This document shows, piece by piece, positions 23,640-51,068 of a stretch of DNA of 64,000 nt; the first letter of the stretch is position 1, and the number at the start of each line of letters is the position of its first letter. The DNA is taken from assembly GCA_002269645.1 (NCBI GenBank), contig NIVC01001502.1, positions 177,571-241,570 of the forward strand, read 5' to 3'. Below the pieces are notes generated by a model, which was not told where the DNA came from, made no database searches, and worked only from the letters and a program-made list of their open reading frames with translations. The DNA comes from Macrostomum lignano. Its lineage: Eukaryota. Made by a program: the position numbers and the translations under genes.

Positions 23640-24362
23640 TGTACATACTGGGTACAGTACTTCAATGTACATATTGTGTACAGAACTTCAATGTACATAT
23701 TGGGTACAGTACATCAATGTACATATTGGGTACAGTACTTCAATGTACATATTGGGTACAGTACTTCAATGTACATATTGGGTACAGTACTTCAATGTAC
23801 ATATTATGTACAGTACTTCAATGTACATATTGTGTACAGTACTTCAATGTACATATTGTGTACAGTACTTCAATGTACATATTTTGTACAATACTTCAAT
23901 GTACATATTGGGTACAGTACTTCAATGTACATATTGTGTACAGTACTTCAATGTACATATTGTGTGCAGCATTTCAATGTACATATTGTGTACAATACTT
24001 CAATGTACATATTGTGTACAGTACTTCAATGTACATATTGGGTACAGTACTTCAATGTACATATTGGGTACAGTACTTCAATGTACATATTTTGTACAAT
24101 ACTTCAATGTACATATTTTGTACAATACTTCAATGTACATATTGTGTACAGTACTTCAATGTACATATTGTGTACAATACTTCAATGTACATATTGGGTA
24201 CAGTACTTCAATGTACATATTGGGTACAGTACTTCAATGTACATATTGTGTACAGTACTTCAATGTACATATTGTGTGCAGCATTTCAATGTACATATTG
24301 GGTACAGTACTTCAATGTACATATTGTGTACAGTACTTCAATGTACATATTGTGTACAGCAC
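23640..24362. repeat. 28-bp minisatellite (gtacagtacttcaatgtacatattgg/gt)n, about 26 copies
   Basis: Directly visible; explains the repetitive ORFs at 23509-24438. Confidence 0.95.
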
Positions 24363-24856
24363 GCCAATATACACATTTTGCAAAGTACTTCTTGTCCTAA
24401 ATAGGAAAAATTATTGTCCTATTAGAATTTTCCTATAAAAATTAGAGAAGGGAAAATTGAGAAGTCAAAAAACAGTCATTCATAATATTGACTGGACTGA
24501 TGAGAGGCAGCAACAACACGGCACAGTAGTTGAGAGTATTAACGAGGCTTGATAAACCTCATGACTGGACGAGTAATTAACAAATTCAATAAAAGCATAG
24601 TTAAAAAAATTAACAAAATTCTAAAATATTTTATAGTTAAGGGAGACGAAAAAGCAATTATTACATTTATTAAAAATATCTAATAATTATAATTAGAACT
24701 TCTATATATGCATAGATAAATTGCGTTATAATGAAAATAATATTGCTATTTAAAAAAGTGTCGGACATCAAGACAATCAAAAAGAATTATAGAGAATTAG
24801 GACACAGCGCAAGCATAGTAGAGCAAGAGTTGCCAGTCACACTGCAGACAGCTGGC

Positions 24857-33424: not shown

Positions 33425-36263
33425 TTTGCTTTATTAAATCTGAAAATGTCAGCTACTTGACAAAAATCGGAGATTCAATTAGACATAACAATCTACAGTA
33501 AACTTTTATAAAAACTATTTAATAAATGCAATACTAACTAAAGGCTAGGCTACCACTACCACAACTATGCTTAATGAGTAGAATTGGCGTTTTCTGTTTT
33601 TCTAATAAGTTTAGTACCTTTCTTTCTACCAAACTTGTTACGTTAAAAAATCTGGCGCGATCATTAAAATATATTTTATTCAAAGTTCGTGCTTCGTTAT
33701 TAACGCTTATGCAGTTAAATCATCTAAATGTAAAAATGAATACTATGCGAATTCCATACTACAATCTAATAACTCAATTTAGAAGACAATTTCTACGTAA
33801 AATTTAATTAAAAAACTTTAATTGCCCCTCAGTTAATTTTTAAATCAGGTCTAGGAGCACTGTGAGTTTTCAAATTAAAAACTACAGTCAACTTTCACCG
33901 CTACCCTCTCTTCACCTTCCAATAGTATATCGGACTAAAATAAAAAAGGGGTTTCTAAAATATTACCGTTTTGGTTCGGTTCCATAGTGAGAGAAATCGC
34001 GTGGTTTCCTACATTGGCAGTATACCGATTGTATTGGAAGAATACGTTGTTTTCATATCGCGAATCGAAATTCTGCCCGTTATTTTTCTAATGATTAGAT
34101 TTACTTACGCTACCTCTATGTCATGAAAATTGCATGCATGTTTTAACATAAACTGCAACAACCTGAATCTTTCTACGACTACGATCTTGCTCGTACACCA
34201 CGTCTCATAAAAGCAGAGCGCAGATTTCGCAATCCTGACTAACACGATCGTTTTTGATTTCTTACTAAGTGCGGTTTTTCACTATCCAGAAGACTCTACC
34301 ATTACTTGCTGTACCCCCCCCCAAGCAGTTGGTGTCGCTTTAATGATCATCGACCATTCTACTGGTCTCTAAAGTACGCGCTGTAGACCCGTCCCTAATG
34401 ATATAGAACCCATCTACAAATAATTATGATATTGCATGTGTGCCCACAAAGAAAAACATCAGCCCCAAATAACTTAGTATCAAAGTTCTTTGATTAAACT
34501 GCTTCCTTTCAAGTGAAATGGCGTCACTGTATGGAATGTAAATTGACTAAATAGACTGCGCGCAGCTAGCTTGTAGATCTTTCATAGCTCATTTGTACAT
34601 GTAAACAATTAATATAGCAATTTATAGCAATTTATAGCAATCTGATCAAAACTACAAGAGCCTGCGCATGCAAATGGTCACACTGAGATATACTATATAC
34701 AATTCCACATACTAAACTGTACATGCATGCATAGGTCAAAGAATCTACTATTTATAGTAGTCCTTGGCAGACAGCTGGTAGGTGCGTGAAATCGGCTCCG
34801 ATGCAATTACATGTACTGTGTATGAACATGCACATGCAAGCATTCAATTTCACAGTTTTATTCTGTACATGTAAATCCAACGCCTATTGCCCAATATGCC
34901 GTTCCGTTCAAATAATCTATACGCATGCTCAACTTTTCGCAATCGCTAATTAGAGCTAGAGATTTAAATCAACTAAATAGGGCATATGAATTAAAATATA
35001 ACAGGTAATTATTCATCCCGAGTTATATCAAATACATGTGCGTAAATACATGTAGACATTGTACATTGAAATATATTCAGATGCATGTACATGTACATGT
35101 AGCTTATACTAAGATTTCTATAAAAAAGGAGGGCACTACACTACTGTAGCTTAAATTTCGTACAGGATATCACAGTATCAGTAGATGCGAAGTGTTTGTG
35201 TACGTATTTCCTATCAGAGTTCATTTATAAAGTTTTTCGACTATACTGCACAGCGGAGCATGTTCATGTCTCGTGCAAGGACAAGTTAAGAACGTAACAG
35301 CTTTAATGAGTCCTAGTCACGTGGAACATTCCGACGTACATGTACGAGGACGAGGAGTAACCGACATCGTACATGTAGGAAGTCACGTGCAAAAAGTAAT
35401 TTTTAAATTGCTCTGGAGAATGTCGACGCCATCAATCAGCTGAGCGTCGGGTGATGTGAAAGTTTCCACCGACATCGCTGTTCATATCTGACATGTAAAG
35501 GGTTTATTCAGCTCGATCTTCCAAGTGTATTACTGGACGTACAAGTAGTAGAAGCATCAGCTAAATTACTAAATTTATGATTTTTCTAAAGCTAGAGAAC
35601 TTGAGTGGGTCGCGTTAAAATATTGCACGCGGTAGTGTTATTTGAATTATGTGCATTCACGTATACATTTTAGCCGCTATATATACATGTATATAGAGAA
35701 CCTTAAAGTGAGTATTAGTCTTCTAGAGCTCTGTATATGAACTCTAAAAATCGATGTTACAATATGTTATAAACAGTATAACTGTACATTGGCTGTCCAT
35801 ACAGTTTGCATCCTTTGATGTTTAAAATCCAAAATTCTAAATTATCAAATATTTTAACAATATGCCTACGCTAAGGGATTATATATTGTCAGGCGGACAA
35901 GTCTCACTGTCAACAATTGCTGCTGTGTGTGCTATAGAACTTGCCAATGTGAGTGTGGATCCAGCTGAATTCCGCTTCTATATGCTCCCACTGAGAGCGT
36001 ATTAGGCTTCGCTGGAACTGCATATCTGGCTGCATGCAACTATGTAGAAACTGCTGGTAGAAGATTCTTTGCCTTCCTGACATCGCTAGAAGAGCTTCCT
36101 CTAGAAGGCTTTTCGTTGCTTCTCCTTGCTTTCCCACTCATCGATCGATGCGAATTTCTAAAAGGCGAATCTGCTGTTGTCTCCGCTCTGTCCAGTAATG
36201 CCCTCCCAGCAGGGCCAGTCACCAACCCCAGCTGAGCCTTGGCGCCCTCTCTGAGGGGAGAAA

Positions 36264-39200
36264 GGGGATGTCAACTTAAGCACCAGAATGGAGCCCGAAG
36301 TTCAGCTCCGGACCAAACCGACTGCAATCGATAACTTGTCCGCCCAGACGACTAGAATCGCCGAGACATCCCATCCGGCTCCCTTCCTTGGGGTCCCAGG
36401 GGATAAAGGGGATAAAATGGGGATCTCATGTCAACTTAAGGCTCTGGAATGGAGCCCGAAGTTCAGCTCCGGACCAAACCGACTGCAATCGATAACTTGT
36501 CCGCCCAGACGACTAGAATCGCCGAGACATCCCATCCGGCTCCCTTCCTTGGGGTCCCAGGGATAAAGGGGATAAAATGGGGATCTCATGTCAACTTAAG
36601 GCTCTGGAATGGAGCCCGAAGTTCAGCTCCGGACCAAACCGATTGCAATCGATAACTTGTCGGCCCAGACGACTAGAATCGCCGAGACATCCCATCCGGC
36701 TCCCTTCCTTGGGGTCCCAGGGGATAAAGGGGATAAAATGGGGATCTCATGTCAACTTAAGGCTCTGGAATGGAGCCCGAAGTTCAGCTCCGGACCAAAC
36801 CGACTGCAATCGATAACTTGTCGGCCCAGACGACTAGAATCGCCGAGACATCCCATCCGGCTCCCTTCCTTGGGGTCCCAGGGGATAAAGGGGATAAAAT
36901 GGGGATCTCATGTCAACTTAAGGCTCTGGAATGGAGCCCGAAGTTCAGCTCCGGACCAAACCGACTGCAATCGATAAGTTGTCGGCCCAGACGACTAGAA
37001 TCGCCGAGACATCCCATCCGGCTCCCTTCCTTGGGGTCCCAGGGGATAAAGGGGATAAAATGGGGATCTCATGTCAACTTAAGGCTCTGGAATGGAGCCC
37101 GAAGTTCAGCTCCGGACCAAACCGACTGCAATCGATAACTTGTCGGCCCAGACGACTAGAATCGCCGAGACATCCCATCCGGCTCCCTTCCTTGGGGTCC
37201 CAGGGGATAAAGGGGATAAAATGGGGATCTCATGTCAACTTAAGGCTCTGGAATGGAGCCCGAAGTTCAGCTCCGGACCAAACCGACTGCAATCGATAAC
37301 TTGTCGCCCAGACGACTAGAATCGCCGAGACATCCCATCCGGCTCCCTTCCTTGGGGTCCCAGGGGATAAAGGGGATAAAATGGGGATCTCATGTCAACT
37401 TAAGGCTCTGGAATGGAGCCCGAAGTTCAGCTCCGGACCAAACCGATTGCAATCGATAACTTGTCGGCCCAGACGACTAGAATCGCCGAGACATCCCATC
37501 CGGCTCCCTTCCTTGGGGTCCCAGGGGATAAAGGGGATAAAATGGGGATCTCATGTCAACTTAAGGCTCTGGAATGGAGCCCGAAGTTCAGCTCCGGACC
37601 AAACCGACTGCAATCGATAACTTGTCGGCCCAGACGACTAGAATCGCCGAGACATCCCATCCGGCTCCCTTCCTTGGGGTCCCAGGGGATAAAGGGGATA
37701 AAATGGGGATCTCATGTCAACTTAAGGCTCTGGAATGGAGCCCGAAGTTCAGCTCCGGACCAAACCGACTGCAATCGATAAGTTGTCGGCCCAGACGACT
37801 AGAATCGCCGAGACATCCCATCCGGCTCCCTTCCTTGGGGTCCCAGGGGATAAAGGGGATAAAATGGGGATCTCATGTCAACTTAAGGCTCTGGAATGGA
37901 GCCCGAAGTTCAGCTCCGGACCAAACCGACTGCAATCGATAACTTGTCGGCCCAGACGACTAGAATCGCCGAGACATCCCATCCGGCTCCCTTCCTTGGG
38001 GTCCCAGGGGATAAAGGGGATAAAATGGGGATCTCATGTCAACTTAAGGCTCTGGAATGGAGCCCGAAGTTCAGCTCCGGACCAAACCGATTGCAATCGA
38101 TAACTTGTCGGCCCAGACGACTAGAATCGCCGAGACATCCCATCCGGCTCCCTTCCTTGGGGTCCCAGGGGATAAAGGGGATAAAATGGGGATCTCATGT
38201 CAACTTAAGGCTCTGGAATGGAGCCCGAAGTTCAGCTCCGGACCAAACCGACTGCAATCGATAACTTGTCGCCCAGACGACTAGAATCGCCGAGACATCC
38301 CATCCGGCTCCCTTCCTTGGGGTCCCAGGGGATAAAGGGGATAAAATGGGGATCTCATGTCAACTTAAGGCTCTGGAATGGAGCCCGAAGTTCAGCTCCG
38401 GACCAAACCGATTGCAATCGATAACTTGTCGGCCCAGACGACTAGAATCGCCGAGACATCCCATCCGGCTCCCTTCCTTGGGGTCCCAGGGGATAAAGGG
38501 GATAAAATGGGATCTCATGTCAACTTAAGGCTCTGGAATGGAGCCCGAAGTTCAGCTCCGGACCAAACCGATTGCAATCGATAACTTGTCGGCCCAGACG
38601 ACTAGAATCGCCGAGACATCCCATCCGGCTCCCTTCCTTGGGGTCCCAGGGGATAAAGGGGATAAAATGGGGATCTCATGTCAACTTAAGGCTCTGGAAT
38701 GGAGCCCGAAGTTCAGCTCCGGACCAAACCGATTGCAATCGATAACTTGTCGGCCCAGACGACTAGAATCGCCGAGACATCCCATCCGGCTCCCTTCCTT
38801 GGGGTCCCAGGGGATAAAGGGGATAAAATGGGGATCTCATGTCAACTTAAGGCTCTGGAATGGAGCCCGAAGTTCAGCTCCGGACCAAACCGATTGCAAT
38901 CGATAAGTTGTCGGCCCAGACGACTAGAATCGCCGAGACATCCCATCCGGCTCCCTTCCTTGGGGTCCCAGGGGATAAAGGGGATAAAATGGGGATCTCA
39001 TGTCAACTTAAGGCTCTGGAATGGAGCCCGAAGTTCAGCTCCGGACCAAACCGATTGCAATCGATAACTTGTCGGCCCAGACGACTAGAATCGCCGAGAC
39101 ATCCCATCCGGCTCCCTTCCTTGGGGTCCCAGGGGATAAAGGGGATAAAATGGGGATCTCATGTCAACTTAAGGCTCTGGAATGGAGCCCGAAGTTCAGC

Positions 39201-40311
39201 TCCGGCCCAAACCGACTGCAATCGATAACTTGTCGGCCCAGACGACTAGAATCGCCGAGACATCCCATCCGGCTCCCTTCCTTGGGGTCCCAGGGGATAA
39301 AGGGGATAAAATGGGGATCTCATGTCAACTTAAGGCCTGGAATGGAGCCCGAAGTTCAGCTCCGGACCAAACCGACTGCAATCGATAACTTGTCGGCCCA
39401 GACGACTAGAATCGCCGAGACATCCCATCCGGCTCCCTTCCTTGGGGTCCCAGGGGATAAAGGGGATAAAATGGGGATCTCATGTCAACTTAAGGCTCTG
39501 GAATGGAGCCCGAAGTTCAGCTCCGGACCAAACCGATTGCAATCGATAACTTGTCGGCCCAGACGACTAGAATCGCCGAGACATCCCATCCGGCTCCCTT
39601 CCTTGGGGTCCCAGGGGATAAAGGGGATAAAATGGGGATCTCATGTCAACTTAAGGCTCTGGAATGGAGCCCGAAGTTCAGCTCCGGACCAAACCGATTG
39701 CAATCGATAACTTGTCGGCCCAGACGACTAGAATCGCCGAGACATCCCATCCGGCTCCCTTCCTTGGGGTCCCAGGGGATAAAGGGGATAAAATGGGGAT
39801 CTCATGTCAACTTAAGGCTCTGGAATGGAGCCCGAAGTTCAGCTCCGGACCAAACCGATTGCAATCGATAAGTTGTCGGCCCAGACGACTAGAATCGCCG
39901 AGACATCCCATCCGGCTCCCTTCCTTGGGGTCCCAGGGGATAAAGGGGATAAAATGGGGATCTCATGTCAACTTAAGGCTCTGGAATGGAGCCCGAAGTT
40001 CAGCTCCGGACCAAACCGACTGCAATCGATAACTTGTCGGCCCAGACGACTAGAATCGCCGAGACATCCCATCCGGCTCCCTTCCTTGGGGTCCCAGGGG
40101 ATAAAGGGGATAAAATGGGGATCTCATGTCAACTTAAGGCCCTGGAATGGAGCCCGAAGTTCAGCTCCGGACCAAACCGATTGCAATCGATAACTTGTCG
40201 GCCCAGACGACTAGAATCGCCGAGACATCCCATCCGGTTTCAAGTGACGAAGCTCTATTCAATTCGAATATCGCATTAGCGGGTGTATTTTATTTTAGCT
40301 ATTATATATTG
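36264..40311 (+). repeat. Left TIR: about 24.6 copies of a 161-bp unit plus about 75 bp of unique inner segment
   Basis: 161-bp periodicity (ORF starts 36609, 36770, 36931 ...). The inner segment tttcaagtgacgaagctctattcaattcgaatatcgcattagcgggtgtattttatt mirrors 44099-44172. Confidence 0.95.
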
Positions 40312-40551
40312 TTTGCATTGTAATATTTCCGTCGTTTAATTTTTCTGGATTTTTGAGAATGTTTTCGCGGTTTTGATTTGACCACTTTAGGCGAGAGATT
40401 TTTGATACTGTGCGTCAAGTATTTGTAGCATTAGTTTAAGTGATATATTTTAAGTGATATATTAATGAAGTTAAGGTTTTGGTCAGTTTTTCTTACTTAG
40501 TTTTATGACAGGTGCAGATTTGTTGCAGATTGCGTTTTATACTTGCTAGTA

Positions 40552-43488
40552 ATGTCCGATTTTACTTGCTCTCAATGTGGTCATCAATTCAGCAAAGCAG
40601 CCAATTTGAACCGACATCTCGAAACGACTAGATGTGGTCGCTGCTCATCTGAATCGTCTGGAGCCTTCGCGCCTCCGAGAAACGCACGAGAGGCGCTTCA
40701 GTTTCTTGCGGTCGGTGGTAAGTATGTGAAAGTTTTTTTGAACCCAAACCTTTTTCCACGAACCGCAAATGAGAAGGAGTTCAAACGTATTTGCGGTCTT
40801 AGCTATAGTGATTTCGATAGCTTCTCAGAAATGTTACCAGAAGTATCTCGCCTTCGTATTTTGACAAAGCCATCTCGAATATTTTTGTACCTGAAGAAGC
40901 TTCGCCAAGGTTGCAGCTTTCAATCATTAGCTTTCGATTTCAACATTTCTGCCCAAAGAGCATGCGACATTTTTTGGGAGATTGCCAAGGAGCAGTACCT
41001 ACGGGATCCATATCAACCGAGGTCGATAGCGTCGACTCCGATTCAGACTCTGCTTGAGGAAAATGTAGTACGCGATCAATTTATTCTCGGTGTATTTCAC
41101 ACACTACTCAAAGGCAAGAAGCTTGTTCTTCTAGTGGGTGATCATACTTACTTTTATCTCCCTAAGAGCAGCTCACACCACACGCAAATTCGAACTTACT
41201 TTTCCGGCAAGAAAATGAATGTGAACAAAAAAATGGCGGTTGTCAACAGTAGAGGAAAAATTATCTACACCGCTCCCCTTACCGCCGCTATCTCGCCAAC
41301 AATGGGCGATGGGAATTTGACTGCAATGCAAGTTGACATGGAGGCTGAAGGACTAATAGAGCCCATTTTGTTGCGCATTCTGTGCTCTGTACAGAAAGAT
41401 TATCACGTTATTGGCATTTTCGACAAAGGTTACAGCCACCAACTTTGTTCACCAACTTCGGTTAACTTCCGCGACTTTATAGAGACTAATAGTAAAGGCT
41501 GCACGACGCTTCTATTTCCGACCAGTCCAGGTGACCGAGTTCTAAACGAGCAGTTTGAATTTGTAAATAATGAGGCTCCTGTTGGTGACCGATCAATACC
41601 AGGAAAGCTTACATCAATCGAAGCAAATACAAGTCGCTGCGCTACGCTTTTCCGTTATCTCGTAGAATGTAGCTTTGCTGCAATCAAGCAGGACAAATGC
41701 ATAAATGAGCGACAGGAGCCGTACCAATGGCTACATGCCCCAGAGTTTACCGAACGCAGCCGGCTCGATGTTGTTATTGAAAACTCCATGGCAAAATTCA
41801 ACCGTTCGCATCCAGGATTTCAAGCTACAAGGAGTCTGCCGCCGTCATGGTCAGATTGCTCCATGTTCGAATACGGACGGAACTTTGCTAAACGTCTTTT
41901 CATTGCGAATGAGCTAGACGAAATTGAGCAACTTGAGTACAATTGCGATTTGACTCGAATACCAACGAGTTCTACCCGAAAATGGACAGCAGTGGATCCC
42001 CTGGACCCTGAAAGTTCAGGGTTCCCCAGCGTTGACGAAAGAAATCTGGAAGAGCTTAGCATCGGCCCATACCACGTTCTTCAGTCAAAACGCTACATCG
42101 AAAACGTCAGAGTTCATGAGGTGCTCAGTAGCTACGCTGGAGACTCGTGGCGCGATTTCGAATTGTTGATTTCTGAACTGCCAAGCCATTTAAAATGCTG
42201 GAAGTTTCATCAGCGAGCGCCACCAAAGGGGTGGAGCAGTAAGTTTGGAGAATGGAGGCCATCTTGGATATATTTAGCCGTTCTTCATTCCCGTCATCGG
42301 TCAAAAACTTACCGAGTTGTCCTTCGTATTTGCGAAACTGCAAGTGGTAACCGATTCGGATTTCGTGACTCGGGGCTGCTGCGTCTGCATGGCTACTTTT
42401 CATCCTCAAAGGCCGGAAGCAGGACAGCAGGGTGTGACAGTCATGTTATGGCTGTGGTTAGAATGCTAGGCTGTTATGCATATCACCCCGAAAGCTACAA
42501 CATGTGCGGCAGCAGCTTCCGATTTATTGACAGTGCTTTGCCAAAAGCACTGATTGCCAATCTTTACAATGATCAATCTGGTGGTCATCCAGCTCCAAAT
42601 GCACCTCGCAGAGACAGTGCTGAATCGCAGCAAGATGAACAGAGGCACAGTTCAAATGCTACTGGTTCATTGAATTCGCCGAAGAAGTTATTTGGGTTGC
42701 CAAATAATGGCCTGCAGTGCTACGCAAATGCAGCAGTGCAATTGTTTCTCTGCCTGCATTCTAATGGATGCATTTTAAAAGAGACTAGCAACGACCAAGT
42801 CCATCGAGAGCTGCTTCGTCTTCTGACGGAGATGCAACAGCGGTCTGCAACAGTCACTCCACTGTTAACGGCAGTTCGGTTGCAACATCCAGATTCATTT
42901 CAAACAAATCAGCACCATTGCGTCAACGAATTTGTTCAAACGCTTCTAATACATCTGGAATTTCTGTCATCAGATGCTTTCACAGAATTTTCACTCATTC
43001 AAACTTGTCGGGATTGCCAGCGCACAAGTGCTGAAGTTCCTGTTGGCACAATCGATAACAGAGTGATTTGCATTCCTCTCTGTCAATTTGAGCGCTCAAT
43101 TGTCAGTTTAGACAAAATCTTCTGCGCTTTTGTCGCTCCTCAGGTAGTGAAATGTTCGGACGCCAATTGCCTGGGCGATTGTAATCAAGAGATCGTAGTA
43201 ACACCTGGAAAGTTTACCCTGATATATCTTGATCGTGCTAGTATGGATGGCCACCTTAAGCTTCAAACTCCTGTAAGCTTTTCTTCAAGGTCAGGGGGTG
43301 TTTCTACACTTGGTAAGCCAGTGGCCACAATATCACACCATGGAAACCGACTGAAATCGGGACATTTCACAGCAAGCGTACTGAGCTGTGTGTGGACGAG
43401 AATTGACGACATGAAAGTTACGTCAGACTATAACCCGTTCGTACGTGAGCCTGAGTGCATCGTGCTCGTTGCACTTTTAAACTCGTAA
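40552..43488 (+). CDS. Transposase-deubiquitinase fusion, 978 aa from ATG 40552: C2H2 finger + HTH + DDE_Tnp_4-like transposase + degenerate SWIM + USP (peptidase C19) domain
   Basis: Uninterrupted ORF. FTCSQCGHQFSKAANLNRHL (C2H2); IFLYLKKLRQGCSFQSLAFDFNISAQRACDIF (HTH_Tnp_4-like); VGDHT...TYFSGKK.N..K...GIFDKGY...RYLVECSF (D-D-E); GLPNNGLQCYANAAVQ (USP Cys box); ATISHHG...SGHFTA...WTRIDD (USP His box). Confidence 0.88.
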   Translation: MSDFTCSQCGHQFSKAANLNRHLETTRCGRCSSESSGAFAPPRNAREALQFLAVGGKYVKVFLNPNLFPRTANEKEFKRICGLSYSDFDSFSEMLPEVSRLRILTKPSRIFLYLKKLRQGCSFQSLAFDFNISAQRACDIFWEIAKEQYLRDPYQPRSIASTPIQTLLEENVVRDQFILGVFHTLLKGKKLVLLVGDHTYFYLPKSSSHHTQIRTYFSGKKMNVNKKMAVVNSRGKIIYTAPLTAAISPTMGDGNLTAMQVDMEAEGLIEPILLRILCSVQKDYHVIGIFDKGYSHQLCSPTSVNFRDFIETNSKGCTTLLFPTSPGDRVLNEQFEFVNNEAPVGDRSIPGKLTSIEANTSRCATLFRYLVECSFAAIKQDKCINERQEPYQWLHAPEFTERSRLDVVIENSMAKFNRSHPGFQATRSLPPSWSDCSMFEYGRNFAKRLFIANELDEIEQLEYNCDLTRIPTSSTRKWTAVDPLDPESSGFPSVDERNLEELSIGPYHVLQSKRYIENVRVHEVLSSYAGDSWRDFELLISELPSHLKCWKFHQRAPPKGWSSKFGEWRPSWIYLAVLHSRHRSKTYRVVLRICETASGNRFGFRDSGLLRLHGYFSSSKAGSRTAGCDSHVMAVVRMLGCYAYHPESYNMCGSSFRFIDSALPKALIANLYNDQSGGHPAPNAPRRDSAESQQDEQRHSSNATGSLNSPKKLFGLPNNGLQCYANAAVQLFLCLHSNGCILKETSNDQVHRELLRLLTEMQQRSATVTPLLTAVRLQHPDSFQTNQHHCVNEFVQTLLIHLEFLSSDAFTEFSLIQTCRDCQRTSAEVPVGTIDNRVICIPLCQFERSIVSLDKIFCAFVAPQVVKCSDANCLGDCNQEIVVTPGKFTLIYLDRASMDGHLKLQTPVSFSSRSGGVSTLGKPVATISHHGNRLKSGHFTASVLSCVWTRIDDMKVTSDYNPFVREPECIVLVALLNS

Positions 43489-44098
43489 AAGCATTTTTAG
43501 CGAAAATACAATTGTTTTAAGCGAGTGTACTGTACGTTTTGTATTGCAGATTTTAAAGGACATGCAGATTAAGAAACAATGTCATCTCACGCATTCTTTA
43601 CGTACCATAGGTTACATGTGAAGATAATTCAGACTGACATCAAATAACAAAAGCTTTGAATTAGTTGTTTCAATTTCTTTTAGACTCACAATTAACTAAA
43701 AATTGGAAGTATTTTTTACTGAAGCAAAGAACTTAAACCCAAAAACCGTTTCTTAGGACTGAGAAACTTTTGCAATTATGATTTTACTAAGCTTTGCGTG
43801 AGAGGCGTTACTTTATTTGCTTAAAAACGTGTGCTGCTTTGCATGACATGCTTTGTTTTTATTACTTTGATAACTTGTACAGCTTTGCATGATATGCTTT
43901 GTATCCATTACGTCATAACTTGTACAGCCTTGCGTGATATTCTTTATTTTACCAATATACATGGTTTCGGTTTATCGTCAAAAGTTCTGCTTACTAATAA
44001 CCAAACGAATTTACAAGTTAATTTTTTCAAACTGAGTTTCCAGATCAGCATTTTTAACAGGTTTCGATACGAGCAAATCATTTTTATTACTTAACAAT

Positions 44099-47000
44099 CA
44101 ATGTATAATAGCTGAAATAAAATACACCCGCTAATGCGATATTCGAATTGAATAGAGCTTCGTCACTTGAAACCGGATGGGATGTCTCGGCGATTCTAGT
44201 CGTCTGGGCCGACAACTTATCGATTGCAGTCGGTTTGGTCCGGAGCTGAACTTCGGGCTCCATTCCAGAGCCTTAAGTTGACACGAGATCCCCATTTTAT
44301 CCCCTTTATCCCCTGGGACCCCAAGGAAGGGAGCCGGATGGGATGTCTCGGCGATTCTAGTCGTCTGGGCCGACAAGTTATCGATTGCAGTCGGTTTGGT
44401 CCGGAGCTGAACTTCGGGCTCCATTCCAGAGCCTTAAGTTGACATGAGATCCCCATTTTATCCCCTTTATCCCCTGGGACCCCAAGGAAGGGAGCCGGAT
44501 GGGATGTCTCGGCGATTCTAGTCGTCTGGGCCGACAACTTATCGATTGCAGTCGGTTTGGTCCGGAGCTGAACTTCGGGCTCCATTCCAGAGCCTTAAGT
44601 TGACATGAGATCCCCATTTTATCCCCTTTATCCCCTGGGACCCCAAGGAAGGGAGCCGGATGGGATGTCTCGGCGATTCTAGTCGTCTGGGCCGACAAGT
44701 TATCGATTGCAGTCGGTTTGGTCCGGAGCTGAACTTCGGGCTCCATTCCAGAGCCTTAAGTTGACATGAGATCCCCATTTTATCCCCTTTATCCCCTGGG
44801 ACCCCAAGGAAGGGAGCCGGATGGGATGTCTCGGCGATTCTAGTCGTCTGGGCCGACAAGTTATCGATTGCAGTCGGTTTGGTCCGGAGCTGAACTTCGG
44901 GCTCCATTCCAGAGCCTTAAGTTGACATGAGATCCCCATTTTATCCCCTTTATCCCCTGGGACCCCAAGGAAGGGAGCCGGATGGGATGTCTCGGCGATT
45001 CTAGTCGTCTGGGCCGACAAGTTATCGATTGCAGTCGGTTTGGTCCGGAGCTGAACTTCGGGCTCCATTCCAGAGCCTTAAGTTGACATGAGATCCCCAT
45101 TTTATCCCCTTTATCCCCTGGGACCCCAAGGAAGGGAGCCGGATGGGATGTCTCGGCGATTCTAGTCGTCTGGGCCGACAAGTTATCGATTGCAGTCGGT
45201 TTGGTCCGGAGCTGAACTTCGGGCTCCATTCCAGAGCCTTAAGTTGACATGAGATCCCCATTTTATCCCCTTTATCCCCTGGGACCCCAAGGAAGGGAGC
45301 CGGATGGGATGTCTCGGCGATTCTAGTCGTCTGGGCCGACAAGTTATCGATTGCAGTCGGTTTGGTCCGGAGCTGAACTTCGGGCTCCATTCCAGGCCTT
45401 AAGTTGACATGAGATCCCCATTTTATCCCCTTTATCCCCTGGGACCCCAAGGAAGGGAGCCGGATGGGATGTCTCGGCGATTCTAGTCGTCTGGGCCGAC
45501 AAGTTATCGATTGCAGTCGGTTTGGTCCGGAGCTGAACTTCGGGCTCCATTCCAGGCCTTAAGTTGACATGAGATCCCCATTTTATCCCCTTTATCCCCT
45601 GGGACCCCAAGGAAGGGAGCCGGATGGGATGTCTCGGCGATTCTAGTCGTCTGGGCCGACAAGTTATCGATTGCAGTCGGTTTGGTCCGGAGCTGAACTT
45701 CGGGCTCCATTCCAGAGCCTTAAGTTGACATGAGATCCCCATTTTATCCCCTTTATCCCCTGGGACCCCAAGGAAGGGAGCCGGATGGGATGTCTCGGCG
45801 ATTCTAGTCGTCTGGGCCGACAAGTTATCGATTGCAGTCGGTTTGGTCCGGAGCTGAACTTCGGGCTCCATTCCAGAGCCTTAAGTTGACATGAGATCCC
45901 CATTTTATCCCCTTTATCCCCTGGGACCCCAAGGAAGGGAGCCGGATGGGATGTCTCGGCGATTCTAGTCGTCTGGGCCGACAAGTTATCGATTGCAGTC
46001 GGTTTGGTCCGGAGCTGAACTTCGGGCTCCATTCCAGAGCCTTAAGTTGACATGAGATCCCCATTTTATCCCCTTTATCCCCTGGGACCCCAAGGAAGGG
46101 AGCCGGATGGGATGTCTCGGCGATTCTAGTCGTCTGGGCCGACAAGTTATCGATTGCAGTCGGTTTGGTCCGGAGCTGAACTTCGGGCTCCATTCCAGAG
46201 CCTTAAGTTGACATGAGATCCCCATTTTATCCCCTTTATCCCCTGGGACCCCAAGGAAGGGAGCCGGATGGGATGTCTCGGCGATTCTAGTCGTCTGGGC
46301 CGACAAGTTATCGATTGCAGTCGGTTTGGTCCGGAGCTGAACTTCGGGCTCCATTCCAGAGCCTTAAGTTGACATGAGATCCCCATTTTATCCCCTTTAT
46401 CCCCTGGGACCCCAAGGAAGGGAGCCGGATGGGATGTCTCGGCGATTCTAGTCGTCTGGGCGACAAGTTATCGATTGCAGTCGGTTTGGTCCGGAGCTGA
46501 ACTTCGGGCTCCATTCCAGAGCCTTAAGTTGACATGAGATCCCCATTTTATCCCCTTTATCCCCTGGGACCCCAAGGAAGGGAGCCGGATGGGATGTCTC
46601 GGCGATTCTAGTCGTCTGGGCCGACAAGTTATCGATTGCAGTCGGTTTGGTCCGGAGCTGAACTTCGGGCTCCATTCCAGAGCCTTAAGTTGACATGAGA
46701 TCCCCATTTTATCCCCTTTATCCCCTGGGACCCCAAGGAAGGGAGCCGGATGGGATGTCTCGGCGATTCTAGTCGTCTGGGCCGACAAGTTATCGATTGC
46801 AGTCGGTTTGGTCCGGAGCTGAACTTCGGGCTCCATTCCAGGCCTTAAGTTGACATGAGATCCCCATTTTATCCCCTTTATCCCCTGGGACCCCAAGGAA
46901 GGGAGCCGGATGGGATGTCTCGGCGATTCTAGTCGTCTGGGCCGACAAGTTATCGATTGCAGTCGGTTTGGTCCGGAGCTGAACTTCGGGCTCCATTCCA

Positions 47001-50000
47001 GGCCTTAAGTTGACATGAGATCCCCATTTTATCCCCTTTATCCCCTGGGACCCCAAGGAAGGGAGCCGGATGGGATGTCTCGGCGATTCTAGTCGTCTGG
47101 GCCGACAAGTTATCGATTGCAGTCGGTTTGGGCCGGAGCTGAACTTCGGGCTCCATTCCAGAGCCTTAAGTTGACATGAGATCCCCATTTTATCCCCTTT
47201 ATCCCCTGGGACCCCAAGGAAGGGAGCCGGATGGGATGTCTCGGCGATTCTAGTCGTCTGGGCCGACAAGTTATCGATTGCAGTCGGTTTGGTCCGGAGC
47301 TGAACTTCGGGCTCCATTCCAGGCCTTAAGTTGACATGAGATCCCCATTTTATCCCCTTTATCCCCTGGGACCCCAAGGAAGGGAGCCGGATGGGATGTC
47401 TCGGCGATTCTAGTCGTCTGGGCCGACAAGTTATCGATTGCAGTCGGTTTGGGCCGGAGCTGAACTTCGGGCTCCATTCCAGAGCCTTAAGTTGACATGA
47501 GATCCCCATTTTATCCCCTTTATCCCCTGGGACCCCAAGGAAGGGAGCCGGATGGGATGTCTCGGCGATTCTAGTCGTCTGGGCCGACAAGTTATCGATT
47601 GCAGTCGGTTTGGTCCGGAGCTGAACTTCGGGCTCCATTCCAGAGCCTTAAGTTGACATGAGATCCCCATTTTATCCCCTTTATCCCCTGGGACCCCAAG
47701 GAAGGGAGCCGGATGGGATGTCTCGGCGATTCTAGTCGTCTGGGCCGACAAGTTATCGATTGCAGTCGGTTTGGTCCGGAGCTGAACTTCGGGCTCCATT
47801 CCAGAGCCTTAAGTTGACATGAGATCCCCATTTTATCCCCTTTATCCCCTGGGACCCCAAGGAAGGGAGCCGGATGGGATGTCTCGGCGATTCTAGTCGT
47901 CTGGGCCGACAAGTTATCGATTGCAGTCGGTTTGGTCCGGAGCTGAACTTCGGGCTCCATTCCAGAGCCTTAAGTTGACATGAGATCCCCATTTTATCCC
48001 CTTTATCCCCTGGGACCCCAAGGAAGGGAGCCGGATGGGATGTCTCGGCGATTCTAGTCGTCTGGGCCGACAAGTTATCGATTGCAGTCGGTTTGGTCCG
48101 GAGCTGAACTTCGGGCTCCATTCCAGAGCCTTAAGTTGACATGAGATCCCCATTTTATCCCCTTTATCCCCTGGGACCCCAAGGAAGGGAGCCGGATGGG
48201 ATGTCTCGGCGATTCTAGTCGTCTGGGCCGACAAGTTATCGATTGCAGTCGGTTTGGTCCGGAGCTGAACTTCGGGCTCCATTCCAGGCCTTAAGTTGAC
48301 ATGAGATCCCCATTTTATCCCCTTTATCCCCTGGGACCCCAAGGAAGGGAGCCGGATGGGATGTCTCGGCGATTCTAGTCGTCTGGGCCGACAAGTTATC
48401 GATTGCAGTCGGTTTGGTCCGGAGCTGAACTTCGGGCTCCATTCCAGGCCTTAAGTTGACATGAGATCCCCATTTTATCCCCTTTATCCCCTGGGACCCC
48501 AAGGAAGGGAGCCGGATGGGATGTCTCGGCGATTCTAGTCGTCTGGGCCGACAACTTATCGATTGCAGTCGGTTTGGGCCGGAGCTGAACTTCGGGCTCC
48601 ATTCCAGAGCCTTAAGTTGACATGAGATCCCCATTTTATCCCCTTTATCCCCTGGGACCCCAAGGAAGGGAGCCGGATGGGATGTCTCGGCGATTCTAGT
48701 CGTCTGGGCCGACAAGTTATCGATTGCAGTCGGTTTGGTCCGGAGCTGAACTTCGGGCTCCATTCCAGAGCCTTAAGTTGACATGAGATCCCCATTTTAT
48801 CCCCTTTATCCCCTGGGACCCCAAGGAAGGGAGCCGGATGGGATGTCTCGGCGATTCTAGTCGTCTGGGCCGACAAGTTATCGATTGCAGTCGGTTTGGT
48901 CCGGAGCTGAACTTCGGGCTCCATTCTGGTGCTTAAGTTGACATGAGATCCCCATTTTATCCCCTTTATCCCCTGGGACCCCAAGGAAGGGAGCCGGATG
49001 GGATGTCTCGGCGATTCTAGTCGTCTGGGCCGACAAGTTATCGATTGCAGTCGGTTTGGTCCGGAGCTGAACTTCGGGCTCCATTCCAGAGCCTTAAGTT
49101 GACATGAGATCCCCATTTTATCCCCTTTATCCCCTGGGACCCCAAGGAAGGGAGCCGGATGGGATGTCTCGGCGATTCTAGTCGTCTGGGCCGACAAGTT
49201 ATCGATTGCAGTCGGTTTGGTCCGGAGCTGAACTTCGGGCTCCATTCCAGAGCCTTAAGTTGACATGAGATCCCCATTTTATCCCCTTTATCCCCTGGGA
49301 CCCCAAGGAAGGGAGCCGGATGGGATGTCTCGGCGATTCTAGTCGTCTGGGCCGACAAGTTATCGATTGCAGTCGGTTTGGTCCGGAGCTGAACTTCGGG
49401 CTCCATTCCAGGCCTTAAGTTGACATGAGATCCCCATTTTATCCCCTTTATCCCCTGGGACCCCAAGGAAGGGAGCCGGATGGGATGTCTCGGCGATTCT
49501 AGTCGTCTGGGCCGACAAGTTATCGATTGCAGTCGGTTTGGTCCGGAGCTGAACTTCGGGCTCCATTCCAGGCCTTAAGTTGACATGAGATCCCCATTTT
49601 ATCCCCTTTATCCCCTGGGACCCCAAGGAAGGGAGCCGGATGGGATGTCTCGGCGATTCTAGTCGTCTGGGCCGACAACTTATCGATTGCAGTCGGTTTG
49701 GGCCGGAGCTGAACTTCGGGCTCCATTCCAGAGCCTTAAGTTGACATGAGATCCCCATTTTATCCCCTTTATCCCCTGGGACCCCAAGGAAGGGAGCCGG
49801 ATGGGATGTCTCGGCGATTCTAGTCGTCTGGGCCGACAAGTTATCGATTGCAGTCGGTTTGGTCCGGAGCTGAACTTCGGGCTCCATTCCAGAGCCTTAA
49901 GTTGACATGAGATCCCCATTTTATCCCCTTTATCCCCTGGGACCCCAAGGAAGGGAGCCGGATGGGATGTCTCGGCGATTCTAGTCGTCTGGGCCGACAA

Positions 50001-50876
50001 GTTATCGATTGCAGTCGGTTTGGTCCGGAGCTGAACTTCGGGCTCCATTCCAGGGCCTTAAGTTGACATGAGATCCCCATTTTATCCCCTTTATCCCCTG
50101 GGACCCCAAGGAAGGGAGCCGGATGGGATGTCTCGGCGATTCTAGTCGTCTGGGCCGACAACTTATCGATTGCAGTCGGTTTGGGCCGGAGCTGAACTTC
50201 GGGCTCCATTCCAGAGCCTTAAGTTGACATGAGATCCCCATTTTATCCCCTTTATCCCCTGGGACCCCAAGGAAGGGAGCCGGATGGGATGTCTCGGCGA
50301 TTCTAGTCGTCTGGGCCGACAAGTTATCGATTGCAGTCGGTTTGGTCCGGAGCTGAACTTCGGGCTCCATTCCAGAGCCTTAAGTTGACATGAGATCCCC
50401 ATTTTATCCCCTTTATCCCCTGGGACCCCAAGGAAGGGAGCCGGATGGGATGTCTCGGCGATTCTAGTCGTCTGGGCCGACAAGTTATCGATTGCAGTCG
50501 GTTTGGTCCGGAGCTGAACTTCGGGCTCCATTCTGGTGCTTAAGTTGACATGAGATCCCCATTTTATCCCCTTTATCCCCTGGGACCCCAAGGAAGGGAG
50601 CCGGATGGGATGTCTCGGCGATTCTAGTCGTCTGGGCCGACAAGTTATCGATTGCAGTCGGTTTGGTCCGGAGCTGAACTTCGGGCTCCATTCCAGAGCC
50701 TTAAGTTGACATGAGATCCCCATTTTATCCCCTTTATCCCCTGGGACCCCAAGGAAGGGAGCCGGATGGGATGTCTCGGCGATTCTAGTCGTCTGGGCCG
50801 ACAAGTTATCGATTGCAGTCGGTTTGGTCCGGAGCTGAACTTCGGGCTCCATTCTGGTGCTTAAGTTGACATCCCC
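44099..50876 (-). repeat. Right TIR: about 41.6 copies of the same 161-bp unit in inverted orientation
   Basis: Reverse-complement units with 161-bp periodicity (ORF ends 44424, 44585, 44746 ...). Confidence 0.95.
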
Positions 50877-51068
50877 TTTCATTTCTTTGTATTTCTTTGT
50901 ACGCTGCTGTGCTCGGCTAAAGTTGACTGAGACCAGCGAGAGACTAAACTTAGTACTCTGCTGGGGGAGAGGACTATTTCAGTAGCTGGCTATTCGAGCA
51001 AAAACAAGCCGCAGTCTCCCTTGACGTGTCGCTGACGCATCGTTGTTCGTCCAATTTCAAAAGCCGTG

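What the first reader, a model, noticed from the sequence alone, without database searches (positions are those of the whole stretch)
40552..43488. DDE transposase fused to an apparently active ubiquitin-specific protease (USP/C19) domain
Seen: one stop-free 978-aa ORF. The N-terminal half has C2H2, HTH and a D(41140)-D(41422)-E(41665) core of Harbinger/ISL2EU type. The last about 265 aa have a USP Cys box (GLPNNGLQCYANAAVQ; Cys codon 42718, oxyanion Asn at -5), finger-subdomain Cys pairs (CRDC, CSDANC) and a His box (HHG...SGHFTA...WTRIDD; His 43363, Asp 43405). The QQD box is altered to HHC. Established: some DNA transposons carry Ulp1/SUMO or OTU cysteine proteases (e.g. Zisupton, some Mutator/CACTA, Ginger, Helitron). 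I do not recall a USP-family domain fused to a PHIS transposase. Inference: a transposon-encoded deubiquitinase that could protect the transposase from degradation, strip H2A/H2B ubiquitin at ends or targets, counter silencing, or self-process the polyprotein.
Basis: partly seen in the sequence, partly recalled or inferred. Interest (0 to 1): 0.92.

Follow-up and report, generated by a model that had tools for sequence, protein, structure and literature searches.

The report
Flatworm transposase fused to a deubiquitinase
A 14.6-kb jumping gene in the flatworm Macrostomum lignano encodes one protein that joins a cut-and-paste transposase to an apparently active ubiquitin-removing protease, and the same fusion is kept in at least seven other distant lineages, so the protease is probably a working part of the transposon.

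Summary
Bases 40552-43488 (+) are one stop-free 978-aa ORF. Its C-terminal 265 aa pass Pfam's UCH/USP threshold. They fold (AlphaFold pLDDT 89) into a USP structure that matches USP18, USP46, USP35 and USP2. The Cys box, oxyanion Asn, His box, Asp pair and zinc-ribbon cysteines are all present, and the QQD box reads HHC.

The N-terminal 690 aa are a DDE transposase of the PIF/Harbinger-ISL2EU-Spy (PHIS) superfamily. D197, D291 and E372 align with the triad of canonical DDE_Tnp_4 proteins.

The fusion is not a one-off. Seven further lineages, mostly from marine metagenomes, carry it at 20-45% identity. The divergence of the two domains is correlated across lineages.

This makes a 14.6-kb foldback-like element. 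Its ends abut AAA and TTT, as Spy elements do.

The host is Macrostomum lignano, shown by a neighbouring gene with a 100% match.

The architecture has a one-sentence precedent: a Trichomonas protein noted in 2010. I rate it a new variant of a known kind, and its function is untested.

The parts
36260..50880 (+). Whole foldback-like DNA transposon, 14.6 kb. The inverted repeat runs from 36260 to 50880. If the AAA and TTT are host target, the element proper is 36264-50876, starting GGGGATGTCAAC.
   Evidence: The outer ends of the two arms are identical up to GAAAGGGGATGTCAACTTAAGCACCAG, and the flanks beyond them are unrelated.
36260..40325 (+). Left terminal inverted repeat: a distinct outermost unit, an array of the 161-bp repeat (36268-40237, 24.7 copies), and 88 nt of non-array inverted repeat (40238-40325).
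   Evidence: TRF reports period 161 with 99% matches. Inverted-repeat pair I8 extends to 40325 and 44085. Sequence read.
44085..50880 (-). Right terminal inverted repeat: 88 nt of inner inverted repeat (44085-44172), then the same 161-bp array in the opposite orientation (44173-50872, 41.7 copies), then the outermost unit.
   Evidence: The 40-mer of the unit occurs 53 times in the window, only in these two arrays, against 0 expected by chance.
36261..36263 (+). AAA next to the left end. Either half of a Spy-type AAA|TTT target site or the tip of the inverted repeat.
   Evidence: Sequence. Target rule from PMC4122938.
50877..50879 (+). TTT next to the right end, the counterpart of the AAA at 36261-36263.
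40552..43488 (+). Single intronless ORF of 978 aa: the transposase-USP fusion protein.
40567..40635 (+). N-terminal zinc finger, aa 6-28, with the spacing C-x2-C-x12-H-x5-C.
   Evidence: Weak Pfam zf-C2H2 match. All four ligands are conserved in P0001.
40861..40977 (+). Helix-turn-helix of the HTH_Tnp_4 type, aa 104-142.
   Evidence: Pfam gives 22.7 bits, below its cutoff. Relatives give the same match. The model is helical here.
41119..41691 (+). DDE catalytic core, aa 190-380: D197 (41140), D291 (41422), E372 (41665).
   Evidence: The three residues align with DxTY, DRGF and R..vE of canonical DDE_Tnp_4 proteins. D291, R368 and E372 are nearly invariant across 39 sequences.
42400..42447 (+). 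Degenerate SWIM-like zinc motif, aa 617-632. The family consensus is CxCxxGxRxxGCCxHV. The window has SxSxxGxRxxGCDxHV.
   Evidence: The L001 lineage shows the same loss.
42529..42687 (+). Disordered linker rich in Ser, Gln, Pro and Arg, about aa 660-712.
   Evidence: pLDDT is below 50 at aa 682-709 in both models. Linker length and sequence vary between lineages.
42688..43485 (+). USP (MEROPS C19, Pfam UCH) cysteine protease domain, aa 713-978. Named residues: N718, C723 (42718), C819/C822, C868/C873, H938 (43363), D952 (43405), D953. HHC stands where the QQD box should be.
   Evidence: Pfam, alignment, AlphaFold model at pLDDT 89.3, Foldseek against USP18, USP46, USP35 and USP2 with E about 1e-17 and TM 0.70-0.74.

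Best explanation
This is an intact-looking, autonomous cut-and-paste DNA transposon of the PHIS superfamily (the PIF/Harbinger, ISL2EU and Spy branch) in the genome of the flatworm Macrostomum lignano.

Its single intronless gene makes a 978-aa protein with these parts, in order:
- a C2HC finger and an HTH, which presumably bind the ends;
- an RNase-H-like DDE core (D197, D291, E372), which cuts and joins DNA;
- an alpha/beta C-terminal region with a decayed SWIM-like zinc motif;
- a disordered linker;
- a compact USP-type cysteine protease with a complete catalytic centre.

The gene lies between two inverted arrays of a 161-bp repeat, 4 kb and 6.8 kb long. Each unit repeats a near-copy of the terminal sequence. 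The arrays probably act as giant terminal inverted repeats with many transposase-binding sites, as in foldback elements.

The protease has been inherited together with the transposase in at least eight lineages, so it is a working module of the transposase. The most likely mechanism, which is inferred, is a deubiquitinase tethered to the transpososome. It would remove ubiquitin, or a related modifier, from the transposase itself or from chromatin and repair proteins at the excision and insertion sites. That would stabilise the transposase or steer break repair.

Shown: the domain identities, the intact catalytic residues, the recurrence and co-divergence of the fusion, and the element's anatomy.
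Inferred: enzymatic activity, substrate, role in transposition, and current mobility.
For: - One stop-free ORF.
- USP domain: Pfam UCH above its cutoff, AlphaFold pLDDT 89.3 and pTM 0.88, top Foldseek PDB matches all USPs with E about 1e-17.
- The Cys, Asn, His and Asp residues and both zinc-ribbon cysteine pairs are conserved in every fused lineage.
- Transposase: 131 homologues in 1.8 billion representative proteins. These include P0006 with DDE_Tnp_4 above its cutoff, and canonical DDE_Tnp_4 plus HTH_Tnp_4 proteins at E from 1e-10 to 1e-4.
- The DDE triad aligns.
- The fusion is present as one ORF in P0010, P0022, P0033, P0046, P0169 and P0177/P0179/P0181. It is also present in the closest relative family, through contigs L001 and L009 that overlap at 94-95% identity.
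- Pairwise identities of the two domains correlate across lineages: r = 0.78, Mantel p about 0.002.
- Inverted 161-bp arrays at 99% identity with matched outermost units.
- Host: a neighbouring ORF is 100% identical to M. lignano BOX15_Mlig031795g1.
- Precedent for active transposon-encoded deubiquitinases: VTD domains (PMC9741609).
Against: - No biochemical or expression data exist.
- The QQD box, which contacts the ubiquitin tail, is HHC here and varies among the transposon lineages. The substrate may therefore not be ubiquitin.
- Pfam DDE_Tnp_4 does not hit the window protein itself.
- Foldseek of the transposase model gives only weak transposase matches: Mos1, P element and Tn5, with E from 3e-3 to 0.1.
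- Only one copy is visible. There is no target-site duplication, and the ends cannot be fixed without a second copy or an empty site.
- Three cysteines of the family's zinc motif are lost in this lineage.
- Within-family dN/dS for the USP part had too few changes to be informative: 5 non-synonymous against 1 synonymous.
- No homologue was found among annotated M. lignano proteins.
Confidence: 0.8

Rival explanations
1. The copy is an immobile relic or a domesticated host gene. The ORF survives but no longer transposes, and the USP domain serves a host function or none.
For: - There is a single copy in 64 kb and no other trace in the window.
- No paralogue is found among annotated M. lignano proteins.
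- There is no target-site duplication.
- The SWIM-like zinc motif has lost three cysteines.
- The two arms differ in copy number, 24.7 against 41.7.
Against: - The ORF is intact and all three DDE residues and all USP catalytic residues are kept.
- The arms are 99-100% identical over stretches longer than 1 kb, and their outermost units match. This points to a young or homogenised element.
- The zinc-motif loss is shared with a relative at 51% identity, so it is a lineage trait and not decay of this copy.
- Lack of a target-site duplication is the rule for Spy elements.
Confidence: 0.15
2. The USP domain acts on a ubiquitin-like modifier other than ubiquitin (SUMO, NEDD8, an ISG15-like protein or another), or it binds without cleaving.
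For: - The QQD box is HHC in the window and varies among fused lineages: QHC, QNC, CEC, FHD, FED, QED.
- The best structural match is the ISG15-specific USP18.
Against: - The catalytic Cys, His, Asp and oxyanion Asn are conserved in all lineages. This argues for catalysis.
- USP18 is also one of the smallest USPs, so the match may reflect size and not specificity.
- Matches to ubiquitin-specific USP46, USP2 and USP35 are equally good.
Confidence: 0.2
3. The protease processes the fusion protein itself and releases the transposase from the USP part.
For: - Viral USP-like and papain-like proteases often do both jobs (general statement in PMC9741609).
- The window linker contains QSGG at aa 675-678.
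Against: - No GG or LRGG motif is conserved in the linkers of the other lineages. The linkers range from 26 to 234 aa and are unrelated in sequence.
- No ubiquitin-like domain is detected.
Confidence: 0.07
4. The inverted arrays are an assembly artefact, such as a palindromic long read, or ordinary satellite DNA into which a small element inserted. In either case they are not part of the transposon.
For: - Long-read assemblies can create false palindromes (general knowledge).
- This window is full of other minisatellite arrays.
Against: - The arms surround a 3.76-kb unique, non-palindromic core.
- They differ in length, and both end outward in the same special unit followed by unrelated flanks.
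- They share an 88-nt non-array segment on the inner side.
- The unit occurs nowhere else in the window.
Confidence: 0.06

Closest known systems
Spy transposons (PHIS superfamily; Han et al. 2014, PMC4122938)
   Same: - A single long ORF with an N-terminal HTH and a DDE core related to IS5, ISL2EU and PIF/Harbinger.
- No target-site duplication, with ends abutting AAA and TTT.
- Terminal inverted repeats of very variable length.
- Found in invertebrates.
   Different: - DDE spacing is D(93)D(80)E, against D(79-80)D(44-62)E.
- The terminus is GGGGATGT, against GGANNNNG.
- The repeats are 4-7 kb of 161-bp tandem units. Spy repeats reach at most 1,474 bp and have no subrepeats.
- Spy has no USP domain.
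- The AAA|TTT reading rests on one copy.
ISL2EU transposons (PHIS; Han et al. 2015, PMC4482050)
   Same: - DDE plus HTH transposase, with terminal inverted repeats that begin GG.
- Relatives of the window protein carry THAP (P0011, P0240).
   Different: - No AT target-site duplication in an A|AT|T target.
- No THAP in the window protein.
- No second ORF with a YqaJ domain.
- A C-terminal USP domain is present.
Trichomonas vaginalis XP_001314237.1 (transposase_11 pfam01609 plus Peptidase C19), mentioned by Bao, Kapitonov and Jurka 2010 (PMC2836005)
   Same: An IS4/IS5-type DDE transposase domain joined to a C19/USP domain in one protein. Canonical relatives of the window protein also match PF01609.
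   Different: It is a single sentence about a protist protein, with no family, element structure or function described. I could not retrieve the sequence, so homology with this clade is untested.
Transposases fused to other ubiquitin or ubiquitin-like proteases: OTU or Ulp1 in Ginger1, Ulp1 in Mutator-like elements, OTU and VTD in Helitrons and Helentrons
   Same: A cysteine protease of the ubiquitin or SUMO system is carried by, and often fused to the C-terminus of, a transposon protein. For VTD, deubiquitinase activity has been shown.
   Different: The protease class differs (USP/C19) and so does the transposase superfamily (PHIS).
Foldback-type elements (Drosophila FB and similar; from my own knowledge, not checked here)
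   Same: Very long terminal inverted repeats built of tandem subrepeats around a short unique core.
   Different: Those elements belong to other transposase superfamilies. Here the core encodes a PHIS transposase with a USP domain.

Membership tests
USP / UCH (Pfam PF00443, MEROPS C19) | Profile match at or above Pfam's gathering score | tested here: met
   37.5 bits against a cutoff of 23.9, E = 2.6e-9, aa 715-958 covering profile positions 2-237 of 254.
USP / UCH (Pfam PF00443, MEROPS C19) | Cys box with the catalytic Cys and the oxyanion Asn at -5 | tested here: met
   GLPNNGLQCYANAAVQ, with C723 and N718. The Cys is conserved in all aligned fused and cellular USPs.
USP / UCH (Pfam PF00443, MEROPS C19) | His box with the catalytic His, followed by Asp or Asn | tested here: met
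   SHHG...SGHFTA (H938 is invariant) and WTRIDD (D952 at W+4, D953 at W+5, the latter nearly invariant).
USP / UCH (Pfam PF00443, MEROPS C19) | USP fold of fingers, palm and thumb, with a zinc ribbon | tested here: met
   AlphaFold pLDDT 89.3 and pTM 0.88. Foldseek against the PDB gives USP18, USP46, USP35 and USP2 at E about 1e-17 and TM 0.70-0.74. C819, C868 and C873 are invariant.
USP / UCH (Pfam PF00443, MEROPS C19) | QQD box that binds the ubiquitin tail | tested here: not met
   HHC stands in the place of QQD. The box is degenerate in several fused lineages.
USP / UCH (Pfam PF00443, MEROPS C19) | Deubiquitinating activity | not testable with these tools
   This needs Ub-AMC or activity-probe assays with a C723A control.
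PHIS superfamily (PIF/Harbinger, ISL2EU, Spy; Pfam DDE_Tnp_4) | Significant sequence relationship to DDE_Tnp_4 transposases | tested here: met
   Pfam gives no direct DDE_Tnp_4 hit on the window protein. However, phmmer links it at E from 1e-10 to 1e-4, in a library of 1.8 billion proteins, to proteins that score 49-79 bits on DDE_Tnp_4. A close relative, P0006, scores 32.4 bits against a cutoff of 24.8.
PHIS superfamily (PIF/Harbinger, ISL2EU, Spy; Pfam DDE_Tnp_4) | A DDE triad that aligns, with the R(3)E signature | tested here: met
   D197 aligns with DGTY, D291 with DRGF, and R368 and E372 with R..vE. D291, R368 and E372 are nearly invariant in 39 sequences.
PHIS superfamily (PIF/Harbinger, ISL2EU, Spy; Pfam DDE_Tnp_4) | Full published spacing D(19-29)K(29)D(18-40)D(11-19)P(18-28)R(3)E | tested here: inconclusive
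   D197-K220/K227, D253-D291 (37 residues between) and R368-E372 fit. The K-D253 and D291-P distances are off by a few residues, and the region between the second D and the E is longer (read).
PHIS superfamily (PIF/Harbinger, ISL2EU, Spy; Pfam DDE_Tnp_4) | N-terminal HTH (HTH_Tnp_4) | tested here: inconclusive
   22.7 bits, below the cutoff of 27. Relatives give the same sub-threshold match. The model is helical in this region.
PHIS superfamily (PIF/Harbinger, ISL2EU, Spy; Pfam DDE_Tnp_4) | Solved-structure match to an RNase-H-like transposase | tested here: inconclusive
   The model is confident (pLDDT 88.8). The best PDB matches are the Mos1, P element and Tn5 transposases, but only at E from 3e-3 to 0.1.
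Spy group | Insertion between AAA and TTT without a target-site duplication | tested here: inconclusive
   The flanks read ...GAG AAA | GGGGATGTCAAC ... GTTGACATCCCC | TTT CAT.... AAA and TTT are also complementary, so they could be the tips of the repeat. There is only one copy and no empty site.
Spy group | A single transposase ORF and no second gene | tested here: met
   Only the 978-aa ORF lies between the repeats.
Spy group | D(79-80)D(44-62)E spacing | tested here: not met
   The window has 93 and 80 residues between the triad members. Criterion.
Spy group | Terminal 5'-GGANNNNG-3' | tested here: not met
   The terminus is GGGGATGT.
ISL2EU group | AT target-site duplication within A|AT|T | tested here: not met
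   No AT adjoins either end. Criterion.
ISL2EU group | THAP domain in the transposase and a second ORF with a YqaJ domain | tested here: not met
   No THAP hit and no second ORF. THAP does occur in the distant relatives P0011 and P0240.
PIF/Harbinger proper | TWA target-site duplication and a second ORF with a Myb/SANT domain | tested here: not met
   Neither is present. Criterion.

The most novel reading that the evidence does not exclude
An old, largely undescribed clade of PHIS cut-and-paste transposases, found in flatworms and in several unidentified marine eukaryotes, carries a catalytically active USP deubiquitinase as an obligatory, co-evolving domain. Its ubiquitin-tail pocket is altered, which may mean an unusual modifier or linkage specificity. 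Transposition would depend on that activity. The Macrostomum copy would be a currently mobile element whose 4-7 kb repeats of 161-bp units are arrays of transposase-binding sites.
Probability: 0.35. Interest if true: 0.8.

Novelty: new variant of a known kind. Interest (0 to 1): 0.62.

Why it matters
Transposons repeatedly pick up proteases of the ubiquitin and SUMO systems (Ulp1, OTU, VTD). Why they do so is still unknown.

Here the largest deubiquitinase class, USP, is fused directly to a simple one-protein cut-and-paste transposase, and the fusion has been kept through deep divergence. That gives a compact system in which the role of deubiquitination in transposition can be tested by a single point mutation (C723A).

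Macrostomum lignano is a laboratory model with transgenesis, so an active endogenous element would also be of practical interest.

The giant tandem-repeat inverted repeats add a case of satellite-like arrays that are physically part of a transposon.

Tried and rejected
1. Direct Pfam and PDB sequence searches with the whole protein found only the USP domain and a weak zinc finger. They found no DDE domain. The DDE assignment had to come from the exhaustive representative search.
2. The word-indexed protein search found one homologue with the single protein and three with the 39-sequence profile. It gave no named or taxon-labelled relatives.
3. Two scans of metagenome contigs for related loci found nothing.
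4. Cluster look-ups gave no organism names for any relative. All are from ENA, Logan or JGI metagenome assemblies, several of them Tara Oceans.
5. A search for terminal inverted repeats in the relatives' contigs found none that flank the ORFs. The contigs are too short and seem to break in repeats.
6. Within-family dN/dS (L006 against L010, 98.4% identical) gave 0.21 overall, but the USP part had only 6 changes. It is uninformative.
7. The neighbour-joining tree separates the subfamily from canonical DDE_Tnp_4 proteins (81% bootstrap). It does not resolve whether the USP domain was gained once. An earlier run timed out.
8. Foldseek with the transposase model gave no significant PDB match.
9. 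Rfam found nothing in the window.
10. Literature searches for ISL2EU, Harbinger or DDE_Tnp_4 together with ubiquitin, USP or UCH found no description of this fusion. The only precedent is the sentence in PMC2836005.
11. I considered a palindromic assembly artefact and rejected it on the anatomy of the arms.
12. I considered self-processing at a GG site and rejected it as not conserved.


Full report
**1. The observation**

Bases 40552-43488 on the + strand are one ORF of 978 codons with no internal stop, from ATG to TAA.
- D197 (41140) in GDHTY.
- D291 (41422) in FDKGY.
- E372 (41665) in RYLVEC.
- C723 (42718) in GLPNNGLQCYANAAVQ, with an Asn five residues before it.
- H938 (43363) in SGHFTA.
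- D952 (43405) in WTRIDD.

Pfam finds UCH/USP (PF00443) at aa 715-958 with 37.5 bits, against a curated cutoff of 23.9 (E = 2.6e-9). It gives sub-threshold matches to HTH_Tnp_4 (aa 104-142) and to a zinc finger (aa 4-25). It gives no DDE_Tnp_4 match. The finger has the spacing C-x2-C-x12-H-x5-C, so it is C2HC and not classical C2H2. All four ligands are kept in the closest relative.

**2. The USP half**

A phmmer search of the domain alone against PDB sequences is only marginal: USP12 at E = 0.08. The domain is therefore very divergent.

I aligned it with the corresponding part of eight fused relatives and seven stand-alone USP-like proteins. The following columns are invariant or nearly so:
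- the catalytic Cys;
- the His of the His box and the Gly before it;
- the Asp at W+5;
- three of the four zinc-ribbon cysteines.

The canonical third triad position (W+4) is Asp in the window. The QQD box aligns with HHC in the window. It is degenerate in the other transposon lineages too: QHC, QNC, CEC, FHD, FED, QED.

AlphaFold2 on this alignment gives a confident model with mean pLDDT 89.3 and pTM 0.88. Foldseek against the PDB returns only USPs at the top, namely USP18, USP46, USP35, USP2, USP8 and USP12, with E about 1e-17 and TM 0.70-0.74. The refutation condition 'no USP fold is detected' is therefore not met.

**3. The transposase half**

An exhaustive HMMER search of 1.84 billion representative proteins gave 131 hits at E <= 1e-3. 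They fall into three groups:
- Close relatives at 28-51% identity over aa about 40-670. One of them, P0006, passes Pfam DDE_Tnp_4.
- More distant hits at E from 1e-10 to 1e-4. These are textbook DDE_Tnp_4 plus DDE_Tnp_1 plus HTH_Tnp_4 proteins.
- USP-only hits.

In pairwise and multiple alignments D197 falls on the DxTY aspartate, D291 on DRGF, and R368 and E372 on R..vE of those canonical proteins. D291, R368 and E372 are nearly invariant over 39 sequences.

The family also shares a C-terminal motif, CxCxxGxRxxGCCxHV, with the canonical proteins. In the window this reads SxSxxGxRxxGCDxHV. The same loss is seen in the relative at 51% identity, so it is a trait of the lineage and not decay of this copy.

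AlphaFold2 of aa 1-700 is confident, with pLDDT 88.8. The PDB holds no close structure. The best matches are the Mos1, P element and Tn5 transposases, at non-significant E-values.

The protein therefore belongs to the IS5 / PIF-Harbinger / ISL2EU / Spy assemblage, called PHIS. Its place within that assemblage is open.

**4. The fusion is a family trait**

Transposase plus USP in one protein is found in the following:
- P0010 and its cluster (1048-1050 aa);
- P0022 (955 aa, aligned to the query from aa 75 to 970 in one stretch);
- P0033 and its cluster (1119 aa, seen on 19 contigs);
- P0046 (1639 aa);
- P0069/P0169 (1010 aa);
- P0083/P0177/P0179/P0181 (1057-1380 aa).

The DNA of six of these loci shows an uninterrupted ORF.

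The closest relative family is split over two short contigs from the same JGI metagenome. L001 carries the transposase, with two frameshifts. L009 carries the linker and the USP domain. The two overlap at 94-95% DNA identity.

Linkers vary from 26 to 234 aa and share no GG or LRGG site.

Across seven full-length lineages the pairwise identities of the two domains are correlated: r = 0.78, Mantel p about 0.002. That is what long co-inheritance predicts.

A neighbour-joining tree separates this subfamily, fused and non-fused members together, from canonical DDE_Tnp_4 proteins with 81% bootstrap. It does not resolve the order inside, so one gain with losses and several gains both remain possible.

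A dN/dS comparison of two copies that are 98.4% identical gave 0.21 overall, but the USP part had too few changes to interpret. The argument for selection on the protease rests on the conserved catalytic residues at 17-41% domain identity.

**5. The element around the ORF**

The ORF lies between two arrays of a 161-bp tandem repeat in opposite orientation. One runs from 36268 to 40237 (24.7 copies) and the other from 44173 to 50872 (41.7 copies). They are 99% alike, with stretches longer than 1.2 kb that are 100% complementary between the arms.

The inverted repeat continues 88 nt inward beyond the arrays, at 40238-40325 and 44085-44172. At the outer ends both arms finish with the same special unit...GGGGATGTCAACTTAAGCACCAG, where internal units read AAGGCTCTGG. 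The flanks beyond are unrelated.

The unit occurs nowhere else in the window. No second copy of the core or of the protein is present.

Each unit contains a near-copy of the terminal sequence, GGGGAT(CTC)ATGTCAACTTAAGG. The arrays are therefore plausibly many repeats of a transposase-binding site. This is inference.

There is no target-site duplication. Read from GGGG, the element (36264-50876) abuts AAA on the left and TTT on the right. That is the target rule described for Spy elements: insertion between AAA and TTT with no duplication (PMC4122938). Because AAA and TTT are complementary they could equally be the tips of the repeat. One copy cannot decide, and the Spy authors needed empty sites to settle the same ambiguity.

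Other Spy criteria are not met: D(79-80)D(44-62)E spacing, a GGANNNNG terminus and no subrepeats in long repeats. The ISL2EU criteria are not met either: an AT duplication, THAP and a second ORF with YqaJ. Nor are those of PIF/Harbinger: a TWA duplication and a Myb/SANT ORF.

Relatives differ in coding capacity. The P0033 family has an upstream 454-aa ORF. The P0010 family has an upstream 580-592-aa ORF with C2H2 fingers. P0003, P0004 and P0005 have a 370-aa N-terminal extension with C2H2 fingers and no USP domain.

**6. Host**

The intronless ORF at 6495-8285 (- strand) is a DEG/ENaC channel (Pfam ASC, E = 5.9e-81). It is 100% identical over its full length to NCBI 'hypothetical protein BOX15_Mlig031795g1 [Macrostomum lignano]'. 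The window is therefore from that free-living flatworm.

The fusion protein itself is not in the 15-billion-protein collection, and no M. lignano paralogue was found.

All relatives come from metagenome or read-archive assemblies, several of them Tara Oceans samples. No organism names are attached.

**7. Mechanism**

Shown:
- a complete DDE centre;
- a complete USP centre in a confident USP fold;
- a flexible tether between the two;
- long co-inheritance of the two domains.

Inferred: the protease works as a deubiquitinase held at the transpososome. It would either keep the transposase from ubiquitin-dependent degradation or edit ubiquitin marks on chromatin or repair factors at the breaks. 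The same proposals have been made for OTU and Ulp1 domains (PMC2836005) and for VTD domains (PMC9741609).

The altered QQD box leaves the modifier open. Self-processing is unlikely, since no cleavage site is conserved.

**8. Comparison and novelty**

Ubiquitin and SUMO proteases on transposons are known. Ulp1 occurs in Mutator-like and Ginger1 elements, OTU in Ginger1 and Helitrons, and VTD in Helentrons, the last with measured deubiquitinase activity.

For the USP class I found one sentence. Bao, Kapitonov and Jurka 2010 note that T. vaginalis XP_001314237.1 combines transposase_11 (pfam01609) with Peptidase C19. I could not retrieve that protein to test homology.

I found no description of a family, of its element structure, of its spread in animals and marine eukaryotes, or of any function. 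Repbase and subscription journals could not be searched.

I therefore rate it a new variant of a known kind.

Noticed in passing
window 6495-8285 (-): An intronless 596-aa DEG/ENaC (ASC) channel gene. It is 100% identical to Macrostomum lignano BOX15_Mlig031795g1, which identifies the host genome.
   Followed up: yes
window 58204-62010 (+): A 1268-aa Ty3/gypsy pol ORF with protease, RT, RNase H and integrase domains, in a stretch of 64-66% G+C that is much higher than the rest of the window. LTRs were not looked for.
   Followed up: partly
window 9400-12148, 20181-22321, 22951-29790: A dense run of unrelated minisatellite arrays. Examples are 20 bp x 107 copies (20181-22321, strongly T-rich strand), 26 bp x 29, 22 bp x 47 and 30 bp x 18. 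The ORF at 23509-24438, with its weak zinc-finger Pfam hit, lies inside the 26-bp array and is probably an artefact.
   Followed up: partly
window 36268-40237 and 44173-50872: The 122-aa ORFs beginning MEPEVQLRTKP... that tile both arrays are by-products of the 161-bp period and not genes. The arrays also show a three-unit (482-bp) higher-order period and scattered variant units.
   Followed up: partly
window 14061-16421 (-) and 17305-18726 (-): Two long ORFs of 786 and 473 aa with no Pfam match. They were not examined further.
   Followed up: no
window 42400-42447 (aa 617-632); L001 about 2745-2800: The family's conserved CxCxxGxRxxGCCxHV zinc motif, which canonical DDE_Tnp_4 relatives also have, has lost three cysteines in the window lineage and in its relative at 51% identity. 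It is unclear whether the region still binds zinc.
   Followed up: partly
L002 1568-2932; L006 202-1944; L010 115-1893: Relatives with the fusion carry an extra upstream ORF on the same strand. It is 454 aa with no Pfam match in the P0033 family, and 580-592 aa with C2H2 fingers and internal 12-bp repeats in the P0010 family. The window element has none.
   Followed up: partly
L006 5832-6346; L003 6359-6520: Tandem repeats lie just downstream of the fusion ORF in relatives: units of about 100 bp in L006 and G-rich GGGGATT-like repeats in L003. The contigs end soon after. This suggests that subterminal repeat arrays are common in the family and break the assemblies.
   Followed up: partly
P0002, P0009, P0018, P0058 (Logan read-archive assemblies): Short protein fragments 57-66% identical to the window transposase. 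They are closer than the best full-length relative and may come from other Macrostomum species or related flatworms. Their samples were not traced.
   Followed up: no
P0081 (542 aa, Logan): A stand-alone protein with one and a half USP domains in tandem. Its Cys box, GLPNNDGVSCYANAALQ, is very like the window's GLPNNGLQCYANAAVQ. It may be a lead to the source of the transposon's USP domain.
   Followed up: no
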